IMG/VR virus record: IMGVR_UViG_3300030098_004828
Location: 62,001 to 126,000 of that record
Length of the DNA stretch: 64,000 nucleotides
Strand: one strand, 5' to 3'
Shown in pieces: positions 39,101 to 51,112 of the stretch. A model generated the notes under the pieces. That model was not told the origin of the DNA. It worked only from the letters and a program-made list of their open reading frames with translations, and ran no database searches. Within the stretch, counting starts at the first letter, position 1; the number at the start of each line of letters is the position of its first letter. Position numbers and translations under genes: made by a program.

Positions 39101-39118
39101 TTTTTTTGTATATTATAA
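39101..39118 (+). promoter_or_regulatory. Putative late-promoter motif TTTGTATATTA
   Basis: The same core recurs upstream of + strand genes at about 40423 and 46350, with variants at 7989 and 29054. Confidence 0.5.
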
Positions 39119-39159
39119 TATAGAGTAAAGTGAATACAAATATATAAAAATAATATAAT

Positions 39160-39498
39160 ATGACAACATGGAATAATTTAAATCCTGTAGAAGCTGCAAA
39201 AACTCAAAAACAATTAGAGTATCAAGAGAATTTAAACAAAATGACAGGTGTTACAGGTGCTGTTCTGTTACATACTTCAGGTGCAAATTTAACAGCTACT
39301 GGTAATTTTTTTGCAATCCAAGGAATAAAAGCAGCTAATGTAGATTTTACATCAGGCGCAGGTACTCAAACATTAGTAACTGGTAGTAATATGGATCAGT
39401 TTACTATTGATTTTATGATTCCTGATGGTGCAACAATTTATGGAAATTTTAGCAAGGTTACATTAGCAAGTGGATATGCTATTGCTTATAAAAAATAA
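39160..39498 (+). CDS. Small beta-rich putative structural protein (112 aa)
   Basis: First gene after the candidate promoter; Gly/Thr/Ala-rich, ending GATIYGNFSKVTLASGYAIAYKK. Confidence 0.5.
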   Translation: MTTWNNLNPVEAAKTQKQLEYQENLNKMTGVTGAVLLHTSGANLTATGNFFAIQGIKAANVDFTSGAGTQTLVTGSNMDQFTIDFMIPDGATIYGNFSKVTLASGYAIAYKK

Positions 39499-40418: not shown

Positions 40419-40437
40419 AATATTTGTATATTATATT

Positions 40438-40746
40438 ATGGAGGAATACATCTTTACAATCATAATTACAGCACTAACAGTATTGTTTAGTGCAGAAGCG
40501 TGGAGATACTATAGGTCTAGAATGAATATTAAATACAACAAAGAATCTATGGCAGAAAAAAGAGAAACAGCATATGTTGACAGTTTAGAACAAAGAGTTT
40601 GTAAATTAGAAGATCTTCTAGGTGCAAGTGCAGCAGAAAAAGATGATCTTAGAGATAAGGTAGTAGAATTAACTGCTGAAGTTGCTACTCTACGTGAAAG
40701 AGTTAAGTTTCTTGAGGCAGATAATGAACGTTTAAAATTATTATAA
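40438..40746 (+). CDS. N-terminal TM helix plus coiled-coil protein (possible lysis accessory)
   Basis: Hydrophobic IFTIIITALTVLFSA followed by a heptad-rich coil. Confidence 0.5.
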   Translation: MEEYIFTIIITALTVLFSAEAWRYYRSRMNIKYNKESMAEKRETAYVDSLEQRVCKLEDLLGASAAEKDDLRDKVVELTAEVATLRERVKFLEADNERLKLL

Positions 40747-40747
40747 T

Positions 40748-40972
40748 ATGAATAAATTGAATCCAAAAGCATCTAGAGGAGAGCAATTACTTGTTGGTTT
40801 GATGGGTAGTGTAGAAAAATTAGGACAAGAAAATGAACTTCTTAAGATTAAATTACAAAAAAAAGAATTAATAGATGGTCCAAGAAAAAAATTAATAGTT
40901 GCACACAAAGATAGACCTGTTAAAAGAAAAGGAGGTTCTTGTGGAACTCCTAGAGGTTTAAAACGTAGATAA
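40748..40972 (+). CDS. Hypothetical basic protein (74 aa)
   Basis: Tightly packed ORF with 1-nt gaps on both sides. Confidence 0.5.
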   Translation: MNKLNPKASRGEQLLVGLMGSVEKLGQENELLKIKLQKKELIDGPRKKLIVAHKDRPVKRKGGSCGTPRGLKRR

Positions 40973-40973
40973 A

Positions 40974-41258
40974 ATGGCAAAAGAATTAAACGAGGACACA
41001 GGTTTTAAGGTTAGTATTAAAACATTAATAGGTATAGGAGTTGCAATGGCTACTGTTATTGGTATGTGGTTTGCTCTTCAAGCAGATATTGAAGAAGCTA
41101 AAATGCTTCCAGAACCTCCTGCACCAGATGTAACACGAATGGAGTTTGATATGAAGGATAAAAATATACGTCTCACTATTGAGAATACTCAGGATGATGT
41201 GACAGAGATCAAAGAAGATCTAAGACGTATAGAGGACAAAATTGATGATTTAAAATGA
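40974..41258 (+). CDS. Single-TM plus coiled-coil protein (94 aa)
   Basis: LIGIGVAMATVIGMWFAL followed by an acidic coil; ATGA overlap with the next gene. Confidence 0.55.
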   Translation: MAKELNEDTGFKVSIKTLIGIGVAMATVIGMWFALQADIEEAKMLPEPPAPDVTRMEFDMKDKNIRLTIENTQDDVTEIKEDLRRIEDKIDDLK

Positions 41259-41578
41259 AAAACTTAATAATTACCTTTTTTCTATTTGTAGGTATAACAA
41301 ATGCACAAATAGAAGTTATTCAATATAATGCGGGATGGAACGCTTCTAATGATGTAGAATGGTGTGAAGATCTTAATGATTGTGATACAGACTATGTTGA
41401 TATAATGGAAAAACCTAAACAACAAGAAAAATATAATATAGCAGTTGTACCAACTATCATTATATTTGATGATGGAGAGGAAATTAAAAGATATCAAGCA
41501 GATATTTCTTTTAGCATCAAAGCAACAAGAGAAGAGGTACAAGAATTTATAGATGAACAAATTGCAAATAAATTTTAA
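41255..41578 (+). CDS. Secreted thioredoxin-like protein lacking CxxC
   Basis: Signal peptide MKNLIITFFLFVGITNA|Q; YNAGWN...YNIAVVPTIIIFDDGEEIKRYQ matches the Trx fold; WCxxC replaced by WNASN. Confidence 0.7.
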   Translation: MKNLIITFFLFVGITNAQIEVIQYNAGWNASNDVEWCEDLNDCDTDYVDIMEKPKQQEKYNIAVVPTIIIFDDGEEIKRYQADISFSIKATREEVQEFIDEQIANKF

Positions 41579-41579
41579 A

Positions 41580-41675
41580 ATGAAAAAAATTTTATGTAAA
41601 TTATTATGTATAGTTAGTTTTAACTCTATATGTATGAAATGGTGTGGTAAATCATGCTGTAAGACCAAGAAATAG
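41580..41675 (+). CDS. Tiny Cys/Lys-rich peptide (31 aa), not in ORF track
   Basis: MKKILCKLLCIVSFNSICMKWCGKSCCKTKK fills the gap, starting 1 nt after the upstream stop. Confidence 0.4.
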   Translation: MKKILCKLLCIVSFNSICMKWCGKSCCKTKK

Positions 41676-41698
41676 TAATAACTTTTAATTAATTAATT

Positions 41699-42073
41699 AT
41701 GGCAAACTCATTAACTCCAACATTAACGTTGAACAGTAATACTGCCCCAACTAATTCACCTCCATTGGTTTTTACAGAGACTGATGTACTTGCTACAGCT
41801 GTCCCAATTGTTGAAACATCACAGGTAAGTGTTGGCACTGTTACTGCTCATCAAATTTTGGACTCAACAACACAAACTTCTGCTACATATGTGTATCTTA
41901 AAAACGAAGATACTGTTAATTCAGTGCTTGTTAAAACAGATGCTGGGGTCACTTTTGGAAAATTACATCCTGGTGAATTTATGTTCTATTGTGCAAATGT
42001 ACAAGAAGGACTAGAAGTGATAGCATTGACTGCTGATTGCGTTGTAGAAATTGGATACTGGACTAAAGCTTAG
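41699..42073 (+). CDS. Small beta-rich protein, paralog of 46534-46908
   Basis: TYVYLKNED..N.VLVKTD.G....L.PGEFMF aligns with TYVYVKNTD..N.VVLKTD.G.....GPDEFAF. Confidence 0.6.
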   Translation: MANSLTPTLTLNSNTAPTNSPPLVFTETDVLATAVPIVETSQVSVGTVTAHQILDSTTQTSATYVYLKNEDTVNSVLVKTDAGVTFGKLHPGEFMFYCANVQEGLEVIALTADCVVEIGYWTKA

Positions 42074-42077
42074 TAAT

Positions 42078-45000
42078 ATGCTTTTTAGGTATAGTCTTAT
42101 ATGGGTTGTGTTATTCCTGTGTTCCGCAGTGAATGCACAATCTACAGACTCTTGGATAAATATTCAATTACAAACAGATAATTATCCAGAGGAAACATCA
42201 TGGCAATTATATAATATTAGCGGTGGTGCAATTGCTGTTAGTGATTCTGTTTTAACAGAACTTACATTACATGACACTGTAGTAAATGTATTATCTGGAG
42301 ATTATATAATTTCTTTAGAAGATTCATGGGGTGATGGATTAGGTGGTTCTCAATGGGGAGGTTCTGATGGATCTTTTCTTATACAAAATGATTGTCAAGA
42401 TACTTTATTTTATGCAGAAGGTGACTTTGGTTTACAATTAATAGATACATTAACTATAGCTCCTTGTGCTCCTCCTATTTCAGGATGTATAGATGAACTT
42501 GCAACAAACTTTAATCCAGATGCTACTGTCTCAGATAATTCTTGCACTTATCCTCCTTGTGAAGGATGGGGAGAACCTTTTGTAGATCAAATATGTGATG
42601 GCGGTCAAGCACTTCTTTATTTTAATTGGGAAGCTTCAGATAATCCTAATTGTAATGTAATTCAAATAACTTATAGTGGTGAAAATACTAACTCTTATAA
42701 CTTTGATGTTAATATAGATAATGGTATATGGGGTGTTTATACCGGTAATGGTCAGATGCCTCCTAACTGGGAAGAGGAATATTCATTCCAAGTAATGTAT
42801 GCTGATAGTACTATGTCAGATACATTTGTACATACTCCATATCCATGTACACAAGGATGTACAGATAATGATGCTCCTAATTATAATCCATGGGCTACAG
42901 TAGATGATGGATCATGTGGAGGTCAAGCATGTGATGCGGGATACACTTCTATAACAATAGATATAACTTTAGATAATTGGCCAGGTGAAACAGGATGGTC
43001 ATTAATTAGTGGTGGTGTAATAGATGAACATATTGATGGGGACTATGACTATCAAGATATAGGTCAAACATTTTCATACTCTTATTGTGTAATGGAAGCT
43101 GGATTTGAATTTATTGTATCTGATACATATGGTGATGGTTTAGCTGGTTCAACTACAGGTGGAAGTTTAGATGGAGATATTCTTATTAGAGGTTGTAATG
43201 GAGATACAATAACTCAATTATCTTCTGGAACTTGGTTAAATGCAGCACAAGAAAATGTTGGTGTTGGTTTTGGTAGTGTAGCTTATTCAGGATGGCAAGA
43301 ACCTATTATATGTGAGACAGATGATGTTGCAGGATGTACTGATCCAACATATCAAGAATTTAATCCAGAAGCTGTTATAGATGATGGTTCATGTGTTATA
43401 GAGCATATATATGGTTGTATAAATGAAAATGCTTTTAACTATGATGAGAACGCAACAGCAATGGATATATATCCTAATTGTAATTATGAACTATGGATAG
43501 GAGATGCAGCTGCTGATGGTTGGGGTAATTCATTCTTAGGAGTTGTACAAGGAGATAATCAATGGTCATTCACAATGGGTCCAGGAGAATATGAACAAAC
43601 TTTTCCTATTTGGTTAGAAACAGATGAACCTGTGAAAATATTTTACTTTGAAGTAGGTGGAGCACAAACTCCTCCAGAAGAAGTGGCTTTTCAAACATTA
43701 CATAATTCATTTAAATTAACAAATGATAACGGAACTGTATTATTATATGAAGGATGGAATCCTTTTGCAGACAATGGTCAAGGTGCACTTCAGCCTTTTG
43801 AGCCTCCATTCTTTCAAACATATAATGCAATGCCTTTCTGTGGTACTCTTTGTATTCCTACAGTAGAAGGTTGTTTAGATTCTACAGCACTGAACTATAA
43901 TGAAGAGGCTAATACAGATGACGGTAGTTGTATAGAGATTATAGAAGGTTGTACTAATGAATTAGCTTTCAATTATGATGAAGAAGCTAACTATGATGAT
44001 GGGTCATGTGAAGCCGTAATTGTTGGTTGTATGGATTCAATAGCATGGAATTATAATGAGGATGCTAACACAGATGGTGGTGATTGTATATATTTAGGTT
44101 GCACTGATTCTTCAGCATGCAACTTCAATCCAAATGCTAATGCAGACAGTGGAGGATGCACTTATCCTGATCAATACTATAATTGTAATGATGTATGTAT
44201 AAATGATGCTGACTCAGATGGAGTATGTGATGAGCTTGAAATACTAGGATGTACTAGTATAGCTGCCATTAACTATAACCCGGAAGCAACTGATGATGAT
44301 GGTAGTTGTGTTGGTGTAGTATACGGTTGTACAGATCCCACTGCTTTTAATTATGACGCTACAGCTAATACAGACAATGGTTCATGTGTACCTGTAATAT
44401 ACGGATGTATAGATGACACAGCATATAATTATGACCCAGCTGCCAATACAGACAATGGAACTTGTATAGAATATGTATATGGTTGTACTGATACAACAGC
44501 TCTTAACTTTGATCCTTTAGCAAATACATTAGACAATTCATGTTGTTATCTTGGAGGATGTACTGATACCACTGCACTAAATTATGATTCAGATGCTTGT
44601 TTTGATGATGGCAGTTGTGTAGTTATAATAGAAGGATGTGCTGATCCTAATGCATATAACTATGATCCGCTAGTTAACTTACCAGATAACAGTACATGTC
44701 TTTATGATGCTGGTTGTTATGGTGGACCAGGTCAACCTTATTGGTTAAATGATCCTTGTTATGCTTGGGTTATAGATGTAGACAGTTATTGTTGTACTTC
44801 TATATGGGATGAAACCTGTCAGGCCATGTATAACTATTGTGAAGATGGTTGGCCTGTAGATCTAAATGAACTATCAGGTAGTGATATAGTTGTTTATCCT
44901 AATCCTACAGCAAACATTTTTAATATAGAAACAAGATTAGATGTTAATGTAGAACTATATAACATGATAGGTGAACTTATAAATACAGATAATATTAAAA

Positions 45001-45092
45001 GAATAGATTTATCAGATAAACCGGATGGTGTTTATAATCTCATTATTACATATGATAAAATAAGAATAACTAAGAAAATAATTAAATTATGA
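42078..45092 (+). CDS. Type IX secretion system (T9SS) cargo protein with 14 Cys-rich GCxD...NY...A..D.GSC repeats
   Basis: Probable start at Met 42078 gives Sec signal MLFRYSLIWVVLFLCSAVNA|Q. C-terminal IVVYPNPTANIFNIE...VELYNMIG...IDLSDKPDGVYNLII...KKIIKL is a type A T9SS sorting domain. Confidence 0.85.
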   Translation: MLFRYSLIWVVLFLCSAVNAQSTDSWINIQLQTDNYPEETSWQLYNISGGAIAVSDSVLTELTLHDTVVNVLSGDYIISLEDSWGDGLGGSQWGGSDGSFLIQNDCQDTLFYAEGDFGLQLIDTLTIAPCAPPISGCIDELATNFNPDATVSDNSCTYPPCEGWGEPFVDQICDGGQALLYFNWEASDNPNCNVIQITYSGENTNSYNFDVNIDNGIWGVYTGNGQMPPNWEEEYSFQVMYADSTMSDTFVHTPYPCTQGCTDNDAPNYNPWATVDDGSCGGQACDAGYTSITIDITLDNWPGETGWSLISGGVIDEHIDGDYDYQDIGQTFSYSYCVMEAGFEFIVSDTYGDGLAGSTTGGSLDGDILIRGCNGDTITQLSSGTWLNAAQENVGVGFGSVAYSGWQEPIICETDDVAGCTDPTYQEFNPEAVIDDGSCVIEHIYGCINENAFNYDENATAMDIYPNCNYELWIGDAAADGWGNSFLGVVQGDNQWSFTMGPGEYEQTFPIWLETDEPVKIFYFEVGGAQTPPEEVAFQTLHNSFKLTNDNGTVLLYEGWNPFADNGQGALQPFEPPFFQTYNAMPFCGTLCIPTVEGCLDSTALNYNEEANTDDGSCIEIIEGCTNELAFNYDEEANYDDGSCEAVIVGCMDSIAWNYNEDANTDGGDCIYLGCTDSSACNFNPNANADSGGCTYPDQYYNCNDVCINDADSDGVCDELEILGCTSIAAINYNPEATDDDGSCVGVVYGCTDPTAFNYDATANTDNGSCVPVIYGCIDDTAYNYDPAANTDNGTCIEYVYGCTDTTALNFDPLANTLDNSCCYLGGCTDTTALNYDSDACFDDGSCVVIIEGCADPNAYNYDPLVNLPDNSTCLYDAGCYGGPGQPYWLNDPCYAWVIDVDSYCCTSIWDETCQAMYNYCEDGWPVDLNELSGSDIVVYPNPTANIFNIETRLDVNVELYNMIGELINTDNIKRIDLSDKPDGVYNLIITYDKIRITKKIIKL
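43868..44700 (+). repeat. Tandem protein-level repeats (GCxDxxAxNYxxxAxxDDGSC), 10 units in this stretch
   Basis: Counted by eye in the translation; four further dispersed units lie between about 42480 and 43470. Confidence 0.85.
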
Positions 45093-45280
45093 AATATTTA
45101 GCAGCATTATGGGTTTTAGTTATTGTAGGTTGTGGATTATTTAATCCTGCAAAATACAATCCTAATCCCACACCAGTAGTAAAAGACTGTTGTCCTAAAG
45201 ATTCAATTAGAGTTGATACAATAAGATTAACAAACGGAGTAGATCATATTATAATGTTAGATACAGTTAAAGTAAAATGA
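45089..45280 (+). CDS. Small lipoprotein (63 aa)
   Basis: MKYLAALWVLVIVG|C lipobox-like signal; ATGA overlaps on both sides. Confidence 0.6.
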   Translation: MKYLAALWVLVIVGCGLFNPAKYNPNPTPVVKDCCPKDSIRVDTIRLTNGVDHIIMLDTVKVK

Positions 45281-46335
45281 GAATAATTTTGTCCATATTA
45301 TTACTTTTATCATTTACGATAAATGCACAAGAAGAAAGTAAGTTTAAAAAAGAACTTAAAAAGACTTTCAAGTTTTCTACATTCTATGCTGCAGTAAATG
45401 GTGGTACTTCTATTTCAGATCAGAATACATATTCTATATTAGATGGACTTCAAACCGATGTAATAGAAACCCCATTTGACTATGCCTTAACCCTAGGTAT
45501 AAGAAAGATACAAAGATTTGGTTACGAAAATAAAGCTAAAAGCTTTAAAGATGGTACAGAATCTTCTTATTCTGATGCCGCTACTATTGGACGAACTAAA
45601 GGTTTTGAGTTTTTATTTGAGATGGACTACCAAAGAAAGTTTGGTGATACATACATAGACCAGAACCACTTTCTACGATACCTAGCAGATAAATGGGTTG
45701 TTAAGGTAGAGTATCTACAGGATGGCTTTGCTGATGTAGAGTACATGGAAGCATCACAACGATATAGACAAAAGATAGGTAAGAGACTTTCCCTTACTGC
45801 AGGGACAGCACAGAGGATCTCCGAGCCTTATGGTTTTGATCCATTAGCACAATGGGTGTTATCCAACGGAAACCTACACTACACAAACCTTGCTTTAGAA
45901 GAAGGGTACACAATTGGCTTTGCACCAACAGGAATAGAGTATATAGACCCTAATGGAGCAGTCGTGGCTACAAGTACTGAAGTTTGGGAAGAGGTGGTGA
46001 TTCCACAAATGCTTGATGACTATGTTAAATCTAGTAAAGACGCATTACCTGTGCAATGGTGTCACTCTTTGGTAATTGGGTTTGACTACTATTATTATAA
46101 AAAGGATATTTGGTTACACTCCTGGGGCAACATCCTTCCTTATCATTTAAATACAGGAGGAGACTATTCATATCATAATTTTAATGGAGGTAATTGGATA
46201 GACTATTCAGCCGGTTTAATATTTGGATATAAGATCAATAAGAACCTTGGTGTCTTTATTGAAGGTAAATATAACAAATACTGGAATAGGGACTGGCATG
46301 ATTTCAAGTTTGGAATAAACTACATCATACTTTAA
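45277..46335 (+). CDS. Predicted outer-membrane beta-barrel protein (352 aa)
   Basis: Signal MRIILSILLLLSFTINA|Q; alternating aromatic/hydrophobic strands; C-terminal FKFGINYIIL resembles a beta-signal. Confidence 0.65.
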   Translation: MRIILSILLLLSFTINAQEESKFKKELKKTFKFSTFYAAVNGGTSISDQNTYSILDGLQTDVIETPFDYALTLGIRKIQRFGYENKAKSFKDGTESSYSDAATIGRTKGFEFLFEMDYQRKFGDTYIDQNHFLRYLADKWVVKVEYLQDGFADVEYMEASQRYRQKIGKRLSLTAGTAQRISEPYGFDPLAQWVLSNGNLHYTNLALEEGYTIGFAPTGIEYIDPNGAVVATSTEVWEEVVIPQMLDDYVKSSKDALPVQWCHSLVIGFDYYYYKKDIWLHSWGNILPYHLNTGGDYSYHNFNGGNWIDYSAGLIFGYKINKNLGVFIEGKYNKYWNRDWHDFKFGINYIIL

Positions 46336-46384
46336 TTTCTAGTATTTTTTTTGTATATTATTATATAACCAAAAATGTAAAACT

Positions 46385-46534
46385 ATGAACTGGATAAACA
46401 GTTGGCGTGAAGGTAACAAGAAAAATATTGTAGACTTCACATTTAGATTTGGGTATTTTACCCTATTAGAATTAAATTGGAACCCTGGCAAAAGCTTTAG
46501 GTTTATAATATTAAATTTTGGATTTGAAATATAA
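46385..46534 (+). CDS. Small hypothetical protein (49 aa), not in ORF track
   Basis: MNWINSWREGNKKNIVDFTFRFGYFTLLELNWNPGKSFRFIILNFGFEI; stop overlaps the next ATG (TAATG); preceded by the TTTGTATATTA motif. Confidence 0.6.
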   Translation: MNWINSWREGNKKNIVDFTFRFGYFTLLELNWNPGKSFRFIILNFGFEI

Positions 46535-46908
46535 TGGCAACAAAAGTACTAAATCTGAGTCTTAAATTATCTATAGATGGTAATTTTAATGGTTTATTTA
46601 ACCTAAATACTACAGAGGATAGTACTGTTGGTTTTGATGACACAACTGCCGCAAGTCAAACTACCACAATAACAACAGGTGGAGCAACAGTAATTGTAGC
46701 TTCTGGAGTTAGTGATATAACGTATGTATATGTAAAAAACACTGATCCTACTAATATTGTAGTATTAAAAACTGATTCTGGTACAGCTTATGCAGATGTT
46801 GGACCAGATGAATTTGCGTTTATACCTGTAAAAGGTGGTGTAGGAATAGAAGCTCAAGCAGCAGGTGGTGACTGTGTAGTTGAATATGCAACATTTAAAA
46901 AAGTTTAA
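46534..46908 (+). CDS. Small beta-rich protein, paralog of 41699-42073
   Basis: Shared TYVYxKNxD motif and C-terminal A..(G/A)DCVVE. Confidence 0.6.
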   Translation: MATKVLNLSLKLSIDGNFNGLFNLNTTEDSTVGFDDTTAASQTTTITTGGATVIVASGVSDITYVYVKNTDPTNIVVLKTDSGTAYADVGPDEFAFIPVKGGVGIEAQAAGGDCVVEYATFKKV

Positions 46909-48005: not shown

Positions 48006-48401
48006 ATGAGTATACTAAAAAAGATTTTTTCAGGCGCAGGAAGTCAGCTTGTAGAATCAGTTGGTGGTGTAATAGATAATTTAGTAACAACAGATGATGA
48101 AAAGAAAGAAGCTAAGAGGAAGCTCAAGGAACTTATCTTAAATCATGAAGCTCAAATGGAAAAGAACATTACTGACCGTTGGACGGCAGATATGAATTCT
48201 GATTCCTGGTTAAGTAAGAATGTAAGACCTATGGTTCTTATATTTTTAATTGTATGCACCATGCTTTTAATATTTATTGATGCAGGCGCATTAAGTTTTG
48301 AAGTAGAAGAAAAATGGACAGATTTACTTCAGTTAGTACTAATTACAGTAATTGGTGCTTATTTTGGTGGAAGAACTGCAGAAAAATTTAAAAAGAAATA
48401 G
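48006..48401 (+). CDS. Holin-like protein (GTA-type 3TM holin family)
   Basis: DRWTADMNSDSWLSKNVRPMVLIFL...LLQLVLITVIGAYFGGRTAEK pattern with hydrophobic helices. Confidence 0.7.
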   Translation: MSILKKIFSGAGSQLVESVGGVIDNLVTTDDEKKEAKRKLKELILNHEAQMEKNITDRWTADMNSDSWLSKNVRPMVLIFLIVCTMLLIFIDAGALSFEVEEKWTDLLQLVLITVIGAYFGGRTAEKFKKK

Positions 48402-49629: not shown

Positions 49630-50070
49630 TTAAACTCCAGTACTTCCTAAACCTCCAGATCCTCTATCAGTATCTTCAAGAAATTCAACGCTTTTAAATT
49701 TCATTTGCTCACATGGAGCAAATACAATTTGTGCAATTCTATCTCCTTTTAATACACTATAATGAGATTTTCCAAGATTTATTAGTATAATTTTTATTTC
49801 TCCTCTATAATCTGAATCAATTGTTCCAGGAGAGTTTAAAACTATAATCTGTTTTTTGGCAGCAAGACCACTGCGTGATCTTATTTGCCCTTCATACCCT
49901 TTAGGTATTTCCATAAATAATCCTGTACCAACAACAACACTGCTTCCTTTTTTAATTACAGCATCTTCATTAGCCCTAAGATCCATACCTGCTGAATTTG
50001 CAGTTTCATACCTAGGATCAGGATTATTGGATTTATTTATTAATTTTATTTTAGATTTAAATATATTCAT
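49630..50070 (-). CDS. dut: dUTP diphosphatase (trimeric dUTPase)
   Basis: All five motifs present: AGMDL, RSGL, GTIDSDYRGEI, GDRIAQ, RGSGGLGSTG. Start at 50070 gives an ATGA overlap with the upstream gene. Confidence 0.95.
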   Translation of the reverse strand: MNIFKSKIKLINKSNNPDPRYETANSAGMDLRANEDAVIKKGSSVVVGTGLFMEIPKGYEGQIRSRSGLAAKKQIIVLNSPGTIDSDYRGEIKIILINLGKSHYSVLKGDRIAQIVFAPCEQMKFKSVEFLEDTDRGSGGLGSTGV

Positions 50071-50249
50071 AGTTCTTCGCCTATACATTTTTTCATTAGG
50101 TTTGCTAGCTTGCTTTCAATAAGTTCAACTATACTTACTAATGAGGTTAAAACAAATAATGTTGCCCAGAACATTATAACTAGTATAAGTAGTATAATAC
50201 CACATAAAGTTCTACCGCAATTTAATAATAATTTTGATATTTTTTTCAT
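50067..50249 (-). CDS. Small membrane protein (60 aa)
   Basis: Long hydrophobic core; coupled by ATGA overlaps on both sides. Confidence 0.55.
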   Translation of the reverse strand: MKKISKLLLNCGRTLCGIILLILVIMFWATLFVLTSLVSIVELIESKLANLMKKCIGEEL

Positions 50250-51112
50250 TTAAAGTATTTTATTTTGTTCCAAGGTATGGAATTTTTGTGACATTTTACA
50301 AAATCTTCCATCCATTGTCTTTTATATTCTGTTCTATATACTATATTGTTTTTATCATACTCTTCATAATCTTCTTCTTGTAATTCTGGCACCCAAAGTT
50401 CTGTTTCTGCGTCAAAATTATTTAATAAATTATGATGATGTCTTCTATTATTATGTGTTAAAAACTCACAACCTGCATGAAGACTTTTTTCTGATATTAC
50501 ATGATCATTAATTAAAGCAAATAATTCTTCATAATCATCTAACCATCCATCATAAATTATAATAGGACTATAGTTTATACGAACATCATAATCTGCTTTT
50601 ATAAATTTTTCTAAAGATTGTATTCTTTCTAATATTGTTGATGTTTCTGGTTCATGTATTATTCTTTTTGATTCAGGCATTAAGTTGAATGTTATTCTGA
50701 TTTTTTGGTCTGGTTTATAGTCTAAAAGCTTTTCATTTACATATCTTGTTGAAAATGAAGCCATTATATCATTGTGATTTTTAAAAAAATTAAATATTCT
50801 TTTCCATTCATGATGTTCAAGATGAAACGCAAAGTCTTCATAATGTCCAATATCATATACTATATACTTATCATGAGCAGAATTTGGTTTTATTATTTTA
50901 GATTTTTCAAATATTACGTGATTGTTTATTTCTGTTAAAATCTGGTTAGTGTTTTTTGCAAGAGATAAACCTGTTGGTTTATTTCTTTTTGCACTCATAT
51001 AAGTACAATTATATAAACACCCTAAACCAAAAGAGGGAGATATATAATCTGAAGAACTACCATCTGGTAATATCTTCAGATTATTTCTAATATCTCTTGT
51101 GATTAATGTCAT
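50246..51112 (-). CDS. Spore photoproduct lyase (radical SAM)-like protein with a degenerate cluster motif
   Basis: SPSFGLGCLYNCTYM (CxxxCxxM), YDIG..EDF..H, FST.YVN, LMPE, ERI, SPII, FLTHN follow the SPL-family pattern. Confidence 0.7.
   Translation of the reverse strand: MTLITRDIRNNLKILPDGSSSDYISPSFGLGCLYNCTYMSAKRNKPTGLSLAKNTNQILTEINNHVIFEKSKIIKPNSAHDKYIVYDIGHYEDFAFHLEHHEWKRIFNFFKNHNDIMASFSTRYVNEKLLDYKPDQKIRITFNLMPESKRIIHEPETSTILERIQSLEKFIKADYDVRINYSPIIIYDGWLDDYEELFALINDHVISEKSLHAGCEFLTHNNRRHHHNLLNNFDAETELWVPELQEEDYEEYDKNNIVYRTEYKRQWMEDFVKCHKNSIPWNKIKYFK

What the first reader, a model, noticed from the sequence alone, without database searches (positions are those of the whole stretch)
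41255..46335. Phage-encoded host-envelope cassette: T9SS cargo, lipoprotein, outer-membrane barrel and periplasmic Trx-like protein
Seen: four exported proteins, three with signal peptides cleaved before Gln. The 1004-aa protein has a type A T9SS CTD and 14 Cys-rich acidic repeats and is translationally coupled (ATGA overlaps) to a lipoprotein and a barrel. Established: the T9SS is Bacteroidota-specific and displays CTD proteins on the cell surface. Inference: a lytic phage uses the host T9SS to remodel the infected cell surface (superinfection exclusion, aggregation or particle adhesion, grazer evasion), with the barrel and lipoprotein as a dedicated anchor or shuttle analogous to PorV-type partners. 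Lying among late genes, it could alternatively end up on virions or membrane vesicles.
Basis: partly seen in the sequence, partly recalled or inferred. Interest (0 to 1): 0.8.

Follow-up and report, generated by a model that had tools for sequence, protein, structure and literature searches.

The report
Phage four-gene T9SS envelope module
A 245-kb marine phage carries a widespread, phage-only set of four co-inherited genes (an inner-membrane protein, a disabled thioredoxin, a long sticky-looking protein addressed to the host's type IX secretion system, and a new outer-membrane barrel); its most likely job is to rebuild the infected cell's surface late in infection, and it often sits inside the cell-bursting (lysis) genes.

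Summary
The ORFs, the three signal peptides cleaved before Gln, the type A T9SS CTD (PF18962, 41 bits against a cut-off of 27), the 14 Cys-rich repeats and the ATGA overlaps are all present. The segment is true phage DNA, not contamination or misassembly.

The real unit differs from the one proposed. Only four genes travel together. In 88 loci found through the barrel, the others occur in 78-79. In 35 well-flanked loci found through tm94, 34 have all four. The four are:
- tm94 (40974-41258, just outside the reported interval), a 94-aa membrane-anchored coiled-coil protein;
- the Trx-like protein, whose CGPC loop is deleted, so it is redox-dead;
- the CTD cargo, built of beta-sandwich domains plus a repeat stalk, which looks like an adhesin;
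- a roughly 14-strand outer-membrane barrel of a new, virus-only family that does not resemble PorV or PorP.

The lipoprotein is lineage-specific (12 of 74 loci) and looks like an o-spanin.

The module occurs in at least 590 IMG/VR contigs with unrelated genome backbones. In 28 of 73 loci it lies within 2 kb of, or encloses, a holin or endolysin gene.

Best reading: a phage-run, T9SS-dependent surface-display system. Its purpose is untested. A role in lysis is the main rival.

The parts
40974..41258 (+). tm94: 94-aa core member. One membrane-spanning helix (residues 17-35), a Pro-rich linker (LPEPPAPD) and an acidic, helical C-terminal part inferred to be periplasmic. Its stop overlaps the Trx-like start (ATGA).
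   Evidence: Present in 79/88 barrel-anchored loci. It is the most conserved member (median 68% identity). It has no Pfam, PHROG or PDB relative, and its nearest atlas clusters are all viral.
41255..41578 (+). Secreted thioredoxin-fold protein (107 aa), core member. It has a signal peptide cleaved before Gln, keeps the cis-Pro motif (VVPT) and has the CGPC active-site loop deleted.
   Evidence: Thioredoxin hits are below threshold for the single sequence. The family profile A5 hits thioredoxins at E=9e-9, with the 'cgpcr' segment as an insertion in thioredoxin relative to the phage family. Present in 78/88 and 77/77 loci.
41580..41675 (+). 31-aa Cys-rich small ORF (7 Cys), an accessory gene of this lineage.
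   Evidence: Read. Conserved directly after the Trx-like gene in 7 loci.
41699..42073 (+). p124a: a 124-aa protein with no export signal, paralogue of 46534-46908. It is a frequent neighbour of the module, not a core member.
   Evidence: 43% identity over 61 aa to 46534-46908. The family occurs in 40/88 loci. It is virus-only and cupin/jelly-roll-like by the atlas structure search.
42078..45092 (+). Cargo, core member (1004 aa). It has a signal peptide (..VNA|Q), four beta-sandwich domains (about residues 24-135, 168-255, 289-410 and 467-560), 14 disulfide-type acidic repeats (four as linkers, ten as a stalk at 599-874), a Cys-rich region (874-934) and a type A T9SS CTD (939-1003).
   Evidence: AF2 model. 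Foldseek finds only strings of FnIII/Ig/C2/BIg adhesin domains and no enzyme. The N-terminal 580 residues define a family of more than 2081 proteins, and nearly all of the 120 listed carry PF18962.
45089..45280 (+). 63-aa lipoprotein (lipobox VIVGC; the mature part is Pro-rich with a CC pair). It is lineage-specific, not a core member, and is a candidate o-spanin.
   Evidence: Homologues occur in only 9/88 loci. Any lipoprotein-like ORF lies near the module in 12/74 loci. In L001/L002 it is located after the cys121 gene.
45277..46335 (+). Outer-membrane beta-barrel, core member (352 aa). It has a signal peptide (..INA|Q), a Lys-rich N-terminal helix, about 14 strands, an invariant but unmodelled loop at residues 81-106, a 77-aa folded insert at 183-259, and a C-terminal ..NYII[LF] signal.
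   Evidence: AF2 pLDDT 80, pTM 0.72. Foldseek finds generic 12-16-strand outer-membrane barrels. No Pfam or NCBIfam family matches any of 44 members. More than 3653 90%-identity clusters exist in metagenomes. Only 5 MAG contigs were found among 185,579 species genomes; four of them carry the whole module and the fifth (L092) ends inside the barrel gene. Atlas neighbours are 100% viral.
40438..40746 (+). cc102: 102-aa protein with an N-terminal membrane helix followed by a coiled coil. It is lineage-specific and a candidate i-spanin. It is the first gene after the promoter-like motif at 40421.
   Evidence: Coiled-coil-type weak Pfam hits and phrog_2658 at 3e-7. Found in 5/88 loci. Motif.
46348..46367 (+). 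Promoter-like motif TTTTTGTATATTATTATATA. It marks the end of the unit that contains the module. Copies lie at 39103 and, with 3 mismatches, at 40421.
   Evidence: 5 matches against 0.75 expected. The core motif lies 8-16 nt after the barrel stop codon in 11 related loci.
48006..48401 (+). Holin (131 aa, three membrane helices), 1.7 kb downstream of the barrel. It is context for the link to lysis.
   Evidence: PF11351 25.5 bits (cut-off 24.8). phrog_3427 'holin' at 1.6e-31. The family lies beside the module in 28/88 loci.

Best explanation
The cassette is one copy of a mobile four-gene envelope module found only in phages. The four genes are tm94, a CXXC-less Trx-fold protein, a stalked adhesin-like cargo with a type A T9SS sorting domain, and a new roughly 14-strand outer-membrane barrel.

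Shown:
- All four carry export or anchor signals.
- Three follow the Bacteroidota Q-rule.
- The cargo has a CTD that passes the family thresholds.
- The four genes are co-inherited in one cyclic order (tm94 > Trx > cargo > barrel) on many unrelated phage backbones.

Inferred mechanism:
1. Late in infection the genes are transcribed as one unit. In this phage that unit runs from the motif before cc102 to the motif after the barrel.
2. Sec exports all four proteins.
3. The redox-dead Trx-fold protein acts as a periplasmic holdase for the 53-Cys cargo, in the way the non-catalytic b' domain of PDI binds substrates.
4. The host SprA/PorV translocon recognises the CTD and moves the cargo to the surface. 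The repeat stalk then holds the N-terminal beta-sandwich domains away from the cell.
5. The host BAM machinery inserts the phage barrel, which serves as the cargo's dedicated outer-membrane partner (anchor or shuttle).
6. tm94 ties the barrel to the inner membrane through the barrel's invariant periplasmic loop.

Most likely purpose: to coat or re-tool the surface of the infected cell and its debris at the time of lysis. That would block further adsorption and save progeny from sticking to debris, as T5 Llp and lambda Lom do. Adhesion to particles is the alternative purpose.

The lipoprotein is not part of this device.
For: - CTD above curated cut-offs and aligned to experimentally used CTDs.
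- Q-rule sites across the families (rule from PMC5837995).
- Linkage: of 88 barrel-anchored loci, tm94 is in 79, Trx in 78 and cargo in 78, while no other gene family exceeds 40. Of 35 tm94-anchored loci with at least 5.5 kb on both sides, 34 have all four genes.
- Different backbones: a jumbo phage with class II RNR and giant ORFs, against a phage with gp32, a RecA/UvsX-like protein, DnaB and RNR, plus several other flank types.
- The cargo is adhesin-like with no enzymatic domain.
- The Trx CXXC loop is deleted.
- The barrel model is a true outer-membrane barrel, and its most conserved loop is unmodelled, as expected for a partner-binding site.
- The family is virus-only.
- A conserved motif bounds the transcription unit.
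- Precedent for a cognate barrel encoded next to its T9SS cargo exists for type B CTDs (PMC9143113, PMC12618676). Precedent for phage outer-membrane proteins masking receptors is cited in bioRxiv 10.64898/2026.10.24.761521.
Against: - No experiment or complex model supports any protein-protein contact.
- Type A CTDs are reported to be served by host PorV, so a private barrel is not obviously needed (PMC12618676).
- The barrel has no detectable kinship to PorV or PorP/SprF and lacks the conserved Cys tail of SprF-type shuttles (PMC12635249).
- About 10% of cargos end in a shorter tail that PF18962 does not recognise.
- One locus (L107) has cargo but no barrel nearby.
- The frequent position inside lysis cassettes fits a lysis role at least as naturally.
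- RNA evidence is weak: one metatranscriptome holds 12% of the sampled words.
Confidence: 0.45

Rival explanations
1. The module is a lysis or lysis-timing device. tm94 (inner-membrane anchored, with a periplasmic helix) and the outer-membrane barrel would form an envelope-bridging complex. That complex would replace or regulate the spanin step, or sense superinfection and hold back the holin, as T4 RI does. The Trx-fold protein and the surface cargo would be accessory or sensor parts.
For: - In 28 of 73 complete modules a holin or endolysin lies within 2 kb of the module or inside it; the count is 36 of 73 if the two-helix mem74 protein is included.
- In the L021/L044 type the order is holin-like > cargo > barrel > tm94 > Trx > PG_binding_1+Amidase_2 endolysin.
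- holin3tm directly abuts the module in at least six different arrangements.
- Phage_holin_4_1 lies nearby in 16 loci.
- tm94 has i-spanin-like topology.
- Small lipoproteins (o-spanin candidates) are absent near 62 of 74 modules, which leaves the outer-membrane step unassigned.
- About 15% of phages are reported to lack spanins and to use other outer-membrane disruptors (bioRxiv 10.1101/515445; PMC6139136).
Against: - A 1000-aa T9SS-exported adhesin-like protein has no place in any known lysis mechanism.
- tm94's periplasmic part (about 58 aa) is short for spanning the periplasm.
- Beta-barrels are not known to fuse membranes.
- About 60% of modules have no recognised lysis gene within 2 kb.
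- Lysis regions are also common dumping grounds for late accessory genes.
- The loci are phylogenetically related, so the counts are not independent.
Confidence: 0.22
2. One reading: cargo, lipoprotein and barrel form the functional trio, with the lipoprotein and barrel acting as a PorV-type anchor or shuttle, and the Trx-like protein as a redox helper.
For: ATGA coupling of cargo, lipoprotein and barrel in this window and in L012/L018. Cargo-barrel adjacency is general.
Against: - The lipoprotein is absent from most modules and is displaced in the close relatives L001/L002.
- The barrel is not PorV-like.
- The Trx protein has no CXXC.
- tm94 is left out.
Confidence: 0.08
3. The cargo, with or without the barrel, ends up on virions or on outer-membrane vesicles or debris released at lysis. 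It would serve the free phage, for example as an adhesin that keeps particles on algal or particle surfaces, rather than serving the infected cell.
For: - The same Cys-rich repeat occurs in a protein annotated 'virion structural protein' of Synechococcus phage S-CAM3.
- The architecture is adhesin-like.
- Expression is apparently timed with lysis.
Against: - Sec and T9SS routing puts the protein outside the cell, whereas tailed-phage virions assemble in the cytoplasm.
- The S-CAM3 match covers 5% of the query and is a repeat unit only.
- No structural genes were identified next to the module.
Confidence: 0.08
4. Host contamination, chimeric assembly, or unrelated exported proteins that merely happen to lie together.
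For: GC is slightly higher in the cassette (0.35 against about 0.30 in the flanks). Five MAG contigs carry the barrel.
Against: - Even depth and zero-mismatch tiling in runs from separate studies.
- The same synteny appears in independent assemblies.
- Four of the five MAG contigs carry the whole phage module; the fifth ends inside the barrel gene.
- No barrel homologue was found in any other of the 185,579 species genomes scanned.
- Linkage is 97%.
Confidence: 0.02

Closest known systems
Type B CTD cargo with a cognate PorP/SprF-like shuttle or anchor barrel (F. johnsoniae SprB-SprF and relatives; PMC9143113, PMC12618676, PMC12635249)
   Same: A large adhesin-like T9SS substrate is encoded next to, and upstream of, its own outer-membrane beta-barrel. 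The pairing is conserved. The barrel is thought to receive or anchor the cargo at the surface.
   Different: Here the CTD is type A, not type B. The barrel matches no PorP/SprF or PorV model and has no conserved Cys tail for disulfide linkage to GldK. The system is phage-encoded and has two extra fixed members (tm94 and a dead Trx).
Phage ORFs with T9SS sorting domains noted in metagenomic phages ('Cryophage', PMC7468147; crAss-like BACON ORFs, PMC6949934)
   Same: Phage-encoded proteins with a type A T9SS CTD, presumed to hijack the host secretion system.
   Different: Those were single, highly variable enzymes or BACON proteins mentioned in passing. No conserved partner genes, barrel or multi-gene module was described. 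The cargo family here is conserved (about 50-70% identity) and non-enzymatic.
Phage-encoded outer-membrane and envelope proteins that mask receptors (lambda Lom, T5 Llp), and the 2026 survey of 1,603 beta-barrel OMPs in huge phages (bioRxiv 10.64898/2026.10.24.761521)
   Same: A phage makes an outer-membrane protein that changes the infected cell's surface. Huge phages often carry OMP genes with envelope-related neighbours.
   Different: Lom is an 8-strand Ail/Lom protein and Llp is a lipoprotein; both act alone. The survey does not mention T9SS (0 occurrences) or this module. The family here has about 14 strands, has no cellular homologues, and is not confined to huge phages: carrier contigs range from about 35 to 245 kb.
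Two-component spanins (lambda Rz/Rz1; PMC6139136)
   Same: A small type II inner-membrane protein with a helical periplasmic part is encoded with an outer-membrane protein in or beside the lysis cassette. In this window cc102 plus the 63-aa Pro-rich lipoprotein look like a classical separated i-/o-spanin pair.
   Different: The module's outer-membrane partner is an integral barrel, not a lipoprotein. tm94 is much shorter than Rz. Two further genes, one of them a 1000-aa secreted protein, are fixed members.
Sortase B plus substrate modules in gut huge phages (bioRxiv 10.64898/2026.10.24.761521)
   Same: A phage supplies both a surface-displayed protein and part of the machinery or addressing needed to put it on the host surface.
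   Different: Those act in Gram-positive hosts through cell-wall sorting. Here the host is diderm, secretion is by T9SS, and the proteins are unrelated.

Membership tests
T9SS type A CTD substrate (PF18962 / TIGR04183) | C-terminal sorting domain that scores above the curated thresholds | tested here: met
   PF18962 41.0 bits (cut-off 27) and TIGR04183 37.4 bits (cut-off 23), residues 939-1003. Nearly all of the 120 listed family members are precomputed as PF18962.
T9SS type A CTD substrate (PF18962 / TIGR04183) | N-terminal Sec signal peptide, plus similarity to CTDs shown to engage the translocon | tested here: met
   Signal ..VNA|QST is read from the sequence and Q21 is invariant in 37 homologues. 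The profile aligns to 8glk_D and 8glj_D, the CTDs in F. johnsoniae T9SS complexes.
T9SS type A CTD substrate (PF18962 / TIGR04183) | Secretion depends on the T9SS (SprA/PorV/GldKLMN) | not testable with these tools
   Needs expression in wild-type and T9SS-mutant Flavobacterium.
PorV (LptO) shuttle family | Sequence membership in the PorV family, and a 14-strand FadL-like fold that superposes on PorV | tested here: not met
   No T9SS outer-membrane protein model was hit by any of 44 family members in Pfam or NCBIfam at E<=1. Foldseek places PorV chain 8gl6_F at rank 47 with TM 0.28.
PorP/SprF-like shuttle/anchor family | PF11751/TIGR03519 membership; a conserved C-tail cysteine pair; pairing with a type B CTD | tested here: not met
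   No HMM hit. No conserved Cys in alignments A2/A3. The partner CTD is type A. Only the gene adjacency to the cargo is shared.
Outer-membrane beta-barrel protein (generic) | Signal peptide, closed antiparallel barrel, C-terminal aromatic/hydrophobic beta-signal | tested here: met
   AF2 pLDDT 80, pTM 0.72, about 14 strands. Foldseek probability 1.00 to NanC, FapF, EspP and NalP, but TMq is at most 0.36. The family consensus ends ..GVNYIIF.
Thioredoxin superfamily | Thioredoxin fold, with homology detectable by profile | tested here: met
   Profile A5 against the PDB hits thioredoxins from E=9e-9 (208 hits at E<=1). The cis-Pro motif VVPT is conserved.
Thioredoxin superfamily | Catalytic CXXC motif | tested here: not met
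   The 'CGPC(R/K)' segment is an insertion in thioredoxin relative to the phage family. The phage consensus reads FNAxWNxAN, and no Cys is invariant.
Two-component spanin (i-spanin + o-spanin) | Type II inner-membrane protein with periplasmic coiled coil, plus a small outer-membrane lipoprotein, in the lysis cassette | tested here: inconclusive
   For the four-gene module: tm94 has the topology, but a lipoprotein is near only 12 of 74 modules, and a lysis gene lies within 2 kb in 28 of 73. For this window: cc102 plus the 63-aa Pro-rich lipoprotein fit the description, but their co-occurrence across relatives is imperfect.
Holin (GTA_holin_3TM, phrog_3427), neighbour at 48006-48401 | Family HMM above threshold and membrane helices | tested here: met
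   PF11351 25.5 bits (cut-off 24.8). phrog_3427 at 1.6e-31.

The most novel reading that the evidence does not exclude
The four genes build a self-contained, phage-encoded apparatus that spans the envelope: tm94 in the inner membrane, the Trx-fold protein in the periplasm, the new barrel in the outer membrane, and a T9SS-delivered stalked protein on the surface. Such an apparatus would couple what happens at the cell surface (for example arrival of further phages, or contact with particles) to the holin/endolysin step. Alternatively it would itself break the Bacteroidota outer membrane. Either way it would be a new class of lysis or lysis-control device in which an integral barrel replaces the o-spanin, spread by horizontal transfer among many marine phage lineages.
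Probability: 0.15. Interest if true: 0.9.

Novelty: new variant of a known kind. Interest (0 to 1): 0.68.

Why it matters
Marine Bacteroidota are major degraders of algal organic matter, and almost nothing is known about how their phages handle the cell envelope. This module occurs in at least 590 IMG/VR viral contigs and in thousands of metagenomic protein clusters. It crosses phage lineages, and it contains three protein families with no described function: the barrel, tm94 and the dead Trx.

If it is a display system, phages would not only borrow the T9SS but also bring their own outer-membrane partner and chaperone. That would make 'who controls the infected cell's surface' a testable question in Flavobacterium genetics.

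If it is a lysis device, it would fill the gap of the missing spanins in Bacteroidota phages.

Either way it gives a sequence marker for phages of T9SS-bearing hosts (CTD plus Q-rule signal peptides). It also offers a compact set of parts for surface display in Bacteroidota.

Tried and rejected
- GenBank phages (INPHARED): no DNA or protein match for the barrel, tm94 or the tm94+Trx DNA. The cargo hits only a single repeat unit in Synechococcus phage S-CAM3 and one marine virus. No cultured carrier phage could therefore be named.
- PHROGs: nothing for the barrel, cargo, tm94 or lipoprotein.
- PDB sequence profiles: nothing for the barrel or tm94.
- Foldseek of the whole cargo gave only generic beta-sandwich strings.
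- Foldseek of the barrel against BFVD gave one unnamed viral relative (A0A516LKJ4, 22% identity) and generic phage OMPs.
- The atlas lead to Pfam Phage_OMP (PF24653) was not confirmed by hmmscan.
- The 363-aa ORF after the cargo in L004 was tested as a second barrel and rejected (23% spurious alignment).
- Sigma-70 and terminator scans were no better than shuffles. The Bacteroidota TAnnTTTG / TTTG-N-TAnnTTTG motifs are not enriched.
- The first genome-contig scan, with the diverse alignment, failed for lack of a conserved stretch. It succeeded with a closer alignment.
- RNA support is weak: one marine metatranscriptome holds 12% of the barrel's sampled words.
- The large upstream ORFs gave no structural-gene annotation, so 'late region' could not be verified.

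Full report
**What is in the sequence**

- a 107-aa protein with a cleavable signal peptide (..TNA|Q);
- a 1004-aa protein starting at the ATG at 42078 (..VNA|Q);
- a 63-aa lipoprotein (lipobox VIVGC);
- a 352-aa protein (..INA|Q).

The stop/start overlaps ATGA at 45089 and 45277 are real. A third overlap joins the upstream 94-aa gene to the Trx-like gene at 41255.

The large protein carries a type A T9SS sorting domain above both curated thresholds: PF18962 41.0 bits against 27, and TIGR04183 37.4 bits against 23. A profile of its family aligns to the CTDs present in solved F. johnsoniae translocon complexes, 8glk_D and 8glj_D.

Exactly 14 repeats of the form C-x(18-20)-C, with an N-[YF]-[ND] core and an acidic tail, can be counted in the translation. 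Four act as linkers between domains. Ten form a stalk at residues 599-874.

**It is phage DNA, correctly assembled**

The window holds phage genes:
- a family B DNA polymerase (phrog_1252);
- primase, exonuclease and an HNH enzyme;
- a class II-type RNR and dUTPase;
- a holin (phrog_3427, 1.6e-31).

The best cultured relative of the polymerase is Cellulophaga phage phi14:2, at 35% identity. The barrel gene is 100% identical to part of IMGVR_UViG_3300030098_004828, a 245,646-bp viral contig.

Logan contigs from runs of different studies tile 40.7-46.3 kb with no differences, at even depths of about 65 (X1) and 26-38 (X5). They cover all gene junctions. Independent assemblies show the same synteny (L001, L002, L009, L012, L018). 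The 'contamination or misassembly' refutation therefore fails.

**The real unit is a four-gene module**

The barrel family is very large: more than 3653 clusters at 90% identity with E<=0.001.

I called ORFs in 88 loci that carry the barrel and clustered all their proteins. Only four families are near-universal:
- the barrel, in 88 loci;
- a 94-aa protein (tm94; window 40974-41258), in 79;
- the Trx-like protein, in 78;
- the cargo family, in 78.

The next most frequent families are:
- a 124-aa paralogue family, in 40 loci;
- a three-helix holin, in 28;
- a two-helix 74-aa protein, in 27.

Everything else occurs in 16 loci or fewer.

Gene order is one cycle, tm94 > Trx > cargo > barrel > (tm94), seen in three rotations and always on one strand.

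The reverse test anchored the search on tm94. It found at least 587 viral contigs. In 77 new loci the Trx-like gene was present in 77, the barrel in 70 and the cargo in 69. Of the 35 loci with at least 5.5 kb on both sides, 34 had all four genes.

The backbones differ. The window type has a class II RNR, giant ORFs and SPL/DUF932 genes. L003-L005 have gp32, a RecA/UvsX-like protein, a 5'-3' exonuclease, DnaB and class I RNR genes directly upstream. Further flank types appear. Carrier contigs range from about 35 to 245 kb. The module is therefore horizontally mobile among phages.

**The lipoprotein is not a member**

Homologues of the 63-aa lipoprotein occur in 9 of 88 loci. Any lipoprotein-like small ORF lies within 2.5 kb of the module in only 12 of 74 loci.

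In the close relatives L001/L002 the lipoprotein gene sits after the cys121 gene. An unrelated 83-aa membrane protein occupies the slot between cargo and barrel there.

The mature part of the lipoprotein is short and Pro-rich and contains a CC pair. The lineage-specific cc102 (40438-40746) has an N-terminal membrane helix followed by a coiled coil. Together these are what a separated i-/o-spanin pair looks like (PMC6139136). Their co-occurrence across relatives is imperfect, so I rate this only as a moderate possibility.

**The four proteins**

*Barrel*
- The AF2 model built on 44 sequences has pLDDT 80 and pTM 0.72. It shows about 14 strands, a Lys-rich N-terminal helix, a 77-aa folded insert (183-259) and an unmodelled loop (81-106).
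- That unmodelled loop is the most invariant stretch in the alignments. This suggests a partner-binding site.
- Foldseek finds only generic 12-16-strand outer-membrane barrels, with TMq at most 0.36. PorV chain 8gl6_F ranks 47th with TM 0.28.
- None of 44 family members hits any outer-membrane or T9SS model in Pfam or NCBIfam. There is no PDB sequence relative.
- Among 185,579 species genomes only five MAG contigs carry it. Four of these carry the whole phage module, and the fifth (L092) ends inside the barrel gene.
- The 100 nearest atlas clusters are all viral.

*Trx-like protein*
- A family profile hits thioredoxins at E=9e-9.
- The CGPC(R/K) loop appears as an insertion in thioredoxin relative to the phage family.
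- The cis-Pro VVPT is kept, and no Cys is invariant. It is a redox-dead Trx fold.

*tm94*
- It has one hydrophobic helix, a Pro-rich linker and a conserved acidic helix (..VTRMEFDMKD..). Median identity to the window copy is 68%.
- It has no relatives in Pfam, PHROGs or the PDB.

*Cargo*
- The N-terminal 580 residues define a family of more than 2081 proteins, and nearly all of the 120 listed carry PF18962.
- The AF2 model shows four beta-sandwich domains. Foldseek returns FnIII, Ig, C2 and BIg adhesin arrays and no enzyme.
- With the CTD at the C-terminus, the stalk would project the N-terminal domains away from the cell. This is an adhesin-like layout.
- Roughly 10% of cargos end in a shorter tail, '..DVLGR...LLFYIYDDGTVEKK', that PF18962 does not detect.

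**Host**

The CTD and the Gln at +1 of the signal peptides (barrel 78/85, cargo 54/62, Trx 56/78) fit the Bacteroidetes Q-rule (PMC5837995). Two of the five MAG bins are Flavobacteriales or Sphingobacteriales. No direct host link was obtained.

**Context: lysis genes**

In this window a holin lies 1.7 kb downstream of the barrel. Across complete modules, 28 of 73 have a recognised holin (GTA_holin_3TM or Phage_holin_4_1) or a PG_binding_1+Amidase_2 endolysin within 2 kb or inside the module. The count is 36 of 73 if the two-helix mem74 protein is included.

In the L021/L044 type the module is wedged between a holin-like gene and the endolysin. Several different arrangements place the holin directly against the module. 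These loci are related to one another, so the counts are not independent events. Even so, the association is well above what a random position in a 40-250-kb genome would give.

**Transcription unit**

The motif TTTTTGTATATTAT(A/T)ATATA occurs at 39103, at 40421 (3 mismatches) and at 46348. That is 5 matches in the window against 0.75 expected. Its core lies 8-16 nt after the barrel stop codon in 11 related loci.

In this phage the genes from cc102 to the barrel are therefore probably one unit. That this motif is a promoter is an inference.

**Interpretation**

Shown:
- export or anchor signals on all four proteins;
- a CTD that passes the family thresholds;
- four-gene co-inheritance across phage backbones;
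- phage-only distribution;
- frequent adjacency to lysis genes.

Inferred:
- the cargo is displayed through the host T9SS;
- the barrel is its outer-membrane partner;
- the dead Trx protein acts as a holdase for a 53-Cys substrate;
- tm94 tethers the complex to the inner membrane.

The nearest working analogy is the type B CTD / PorP-SprF cognate pair (PMC9143113, PMC12618676). Membership in that family is excluded on the features I could test.

I favour surface remodelling at the time of lysis as the purpose. This would mean exclusion of further phages and protection of progeny from debris, with particle adhesion as the alternative. Precedents are Lom and Llp (the Lom study is cited in bioRxiv 10.64898/2026.10.24.761521).

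The main rival is a direct role in lysis or in lysis timing.

**Novelty**

T9SS CTDs on phage ORFs were noted in 2019 and 2020 (PMC6949934, PMC7468147). A 2026 preprint surveyed 1,603 OMPs in huge phages without mentioning T9SS.

I found no description of this conserved four-gene module or of its barrel, tm94 or dead-Trx families in the searched literature. Absence from that library is not proof of absence.

Noticed in passing
window 39103-39122, 40421-40440, 46348-46367; L001, L002, L009-L013, L015, L017, L018, L091 just after the barrel stop codon: AT-rich motif TTTTTGTATATTAT(A/T)ATATA, with 5 matches in the window against 0.75 expected. Its core lies 8-16 nt after the barrel stop codon in 11 relatives. 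It is probably a phage promoter that marks transcription-unit boundaries.
   Followed up: partly
window 41580-41675: 31-aa ORF with 7 cysteines (MKKILCKLLCIVSF..), starting 2 nt after the Trx-like stop codon. It is conserved in the same place in 7 loci, including the more distant L081.
   Followed up: partly
window 41699-42073 and 46534-46908 (possibly also 39160-39498): Paralogous 124-aa proteins flank the cargo-barrel pair (43% identity over 61 aa). The family is virus-only and cupin/jelly-roll-like by the atlas structure search. It lies beside the module in 40 of 88 loci, often in 2-3 copies. Its function is unknown.
   Followed up: partly
window 46385-46534: 49-aa ORF between the barrel and p124b, overlapping the p124b start (TAATG). 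The same ORF was called independently in L001 (11115-11264).
   Followed up: no
window 81-36851 (+ strand): A run of giant ORFs of 1743, 875, 1216, 5791 and 2593 aa. The first three have no Pfam or PHROG match. The 5791-aa ORF exceeds the scan's length limit and was not scanned. The 2593-aa ORF has an N-terminal CCA-adding tRNA nucleotidyltransferase plus HD domain (PF01743, PF01966, phrog_2244).
   Followed up: partly
L107:7613-8290 and L107:8292-11147: In one 123-kb viral contig a 225-aa glycosyltransferase-like ORF is inserted between Trx and cargo. The cargo there has the variant C-terminus, and no barrel follows within 3 kb. This is the only well-flanked exception to the four-gene linkage.
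   Followed up: partly
L045, L055, L058, L060, L072-L074, L084 cargo C-termini: About 10% of cargos end in '..DVLGR......LLFYIYDDGTVEKK' instead of a PF18962-detectable CTD. This may be a shortened or divergent sorting signal.
   Followed up: partly
window 40900-41099 and 44700-44899: Summed contig depth peaks at 4-14 times the baseline over the 5' half of tm94 and over the Cys-rich region just before the CTD, in two metagenomes. Many co-occurring phages share these stretches at 90% nucleotide identity or more.
   Followed up: no
L002:9750-10001, L004:7047-7301, L004:13015-13239: Small two-helix membrane proteins (83-84 aa and about 74 aa) occupy variable slots next to the barrel or after the Trx or cargo gene. 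The 74-aa family is in 27 of 88 loci and often directly precedes the three-helix holin. They may be holin or antiholin partners.
   Followed up: no
window 50246-51112 (-) and 49630-50088 (-): A spore-photoproduct-lyase-like radical SAM protein (PF20903) and a dUTPase lie at the start of the minus-strand replication block. L001 additionally carries a GH16 glycoside hydrolase there.
   Followed up: no
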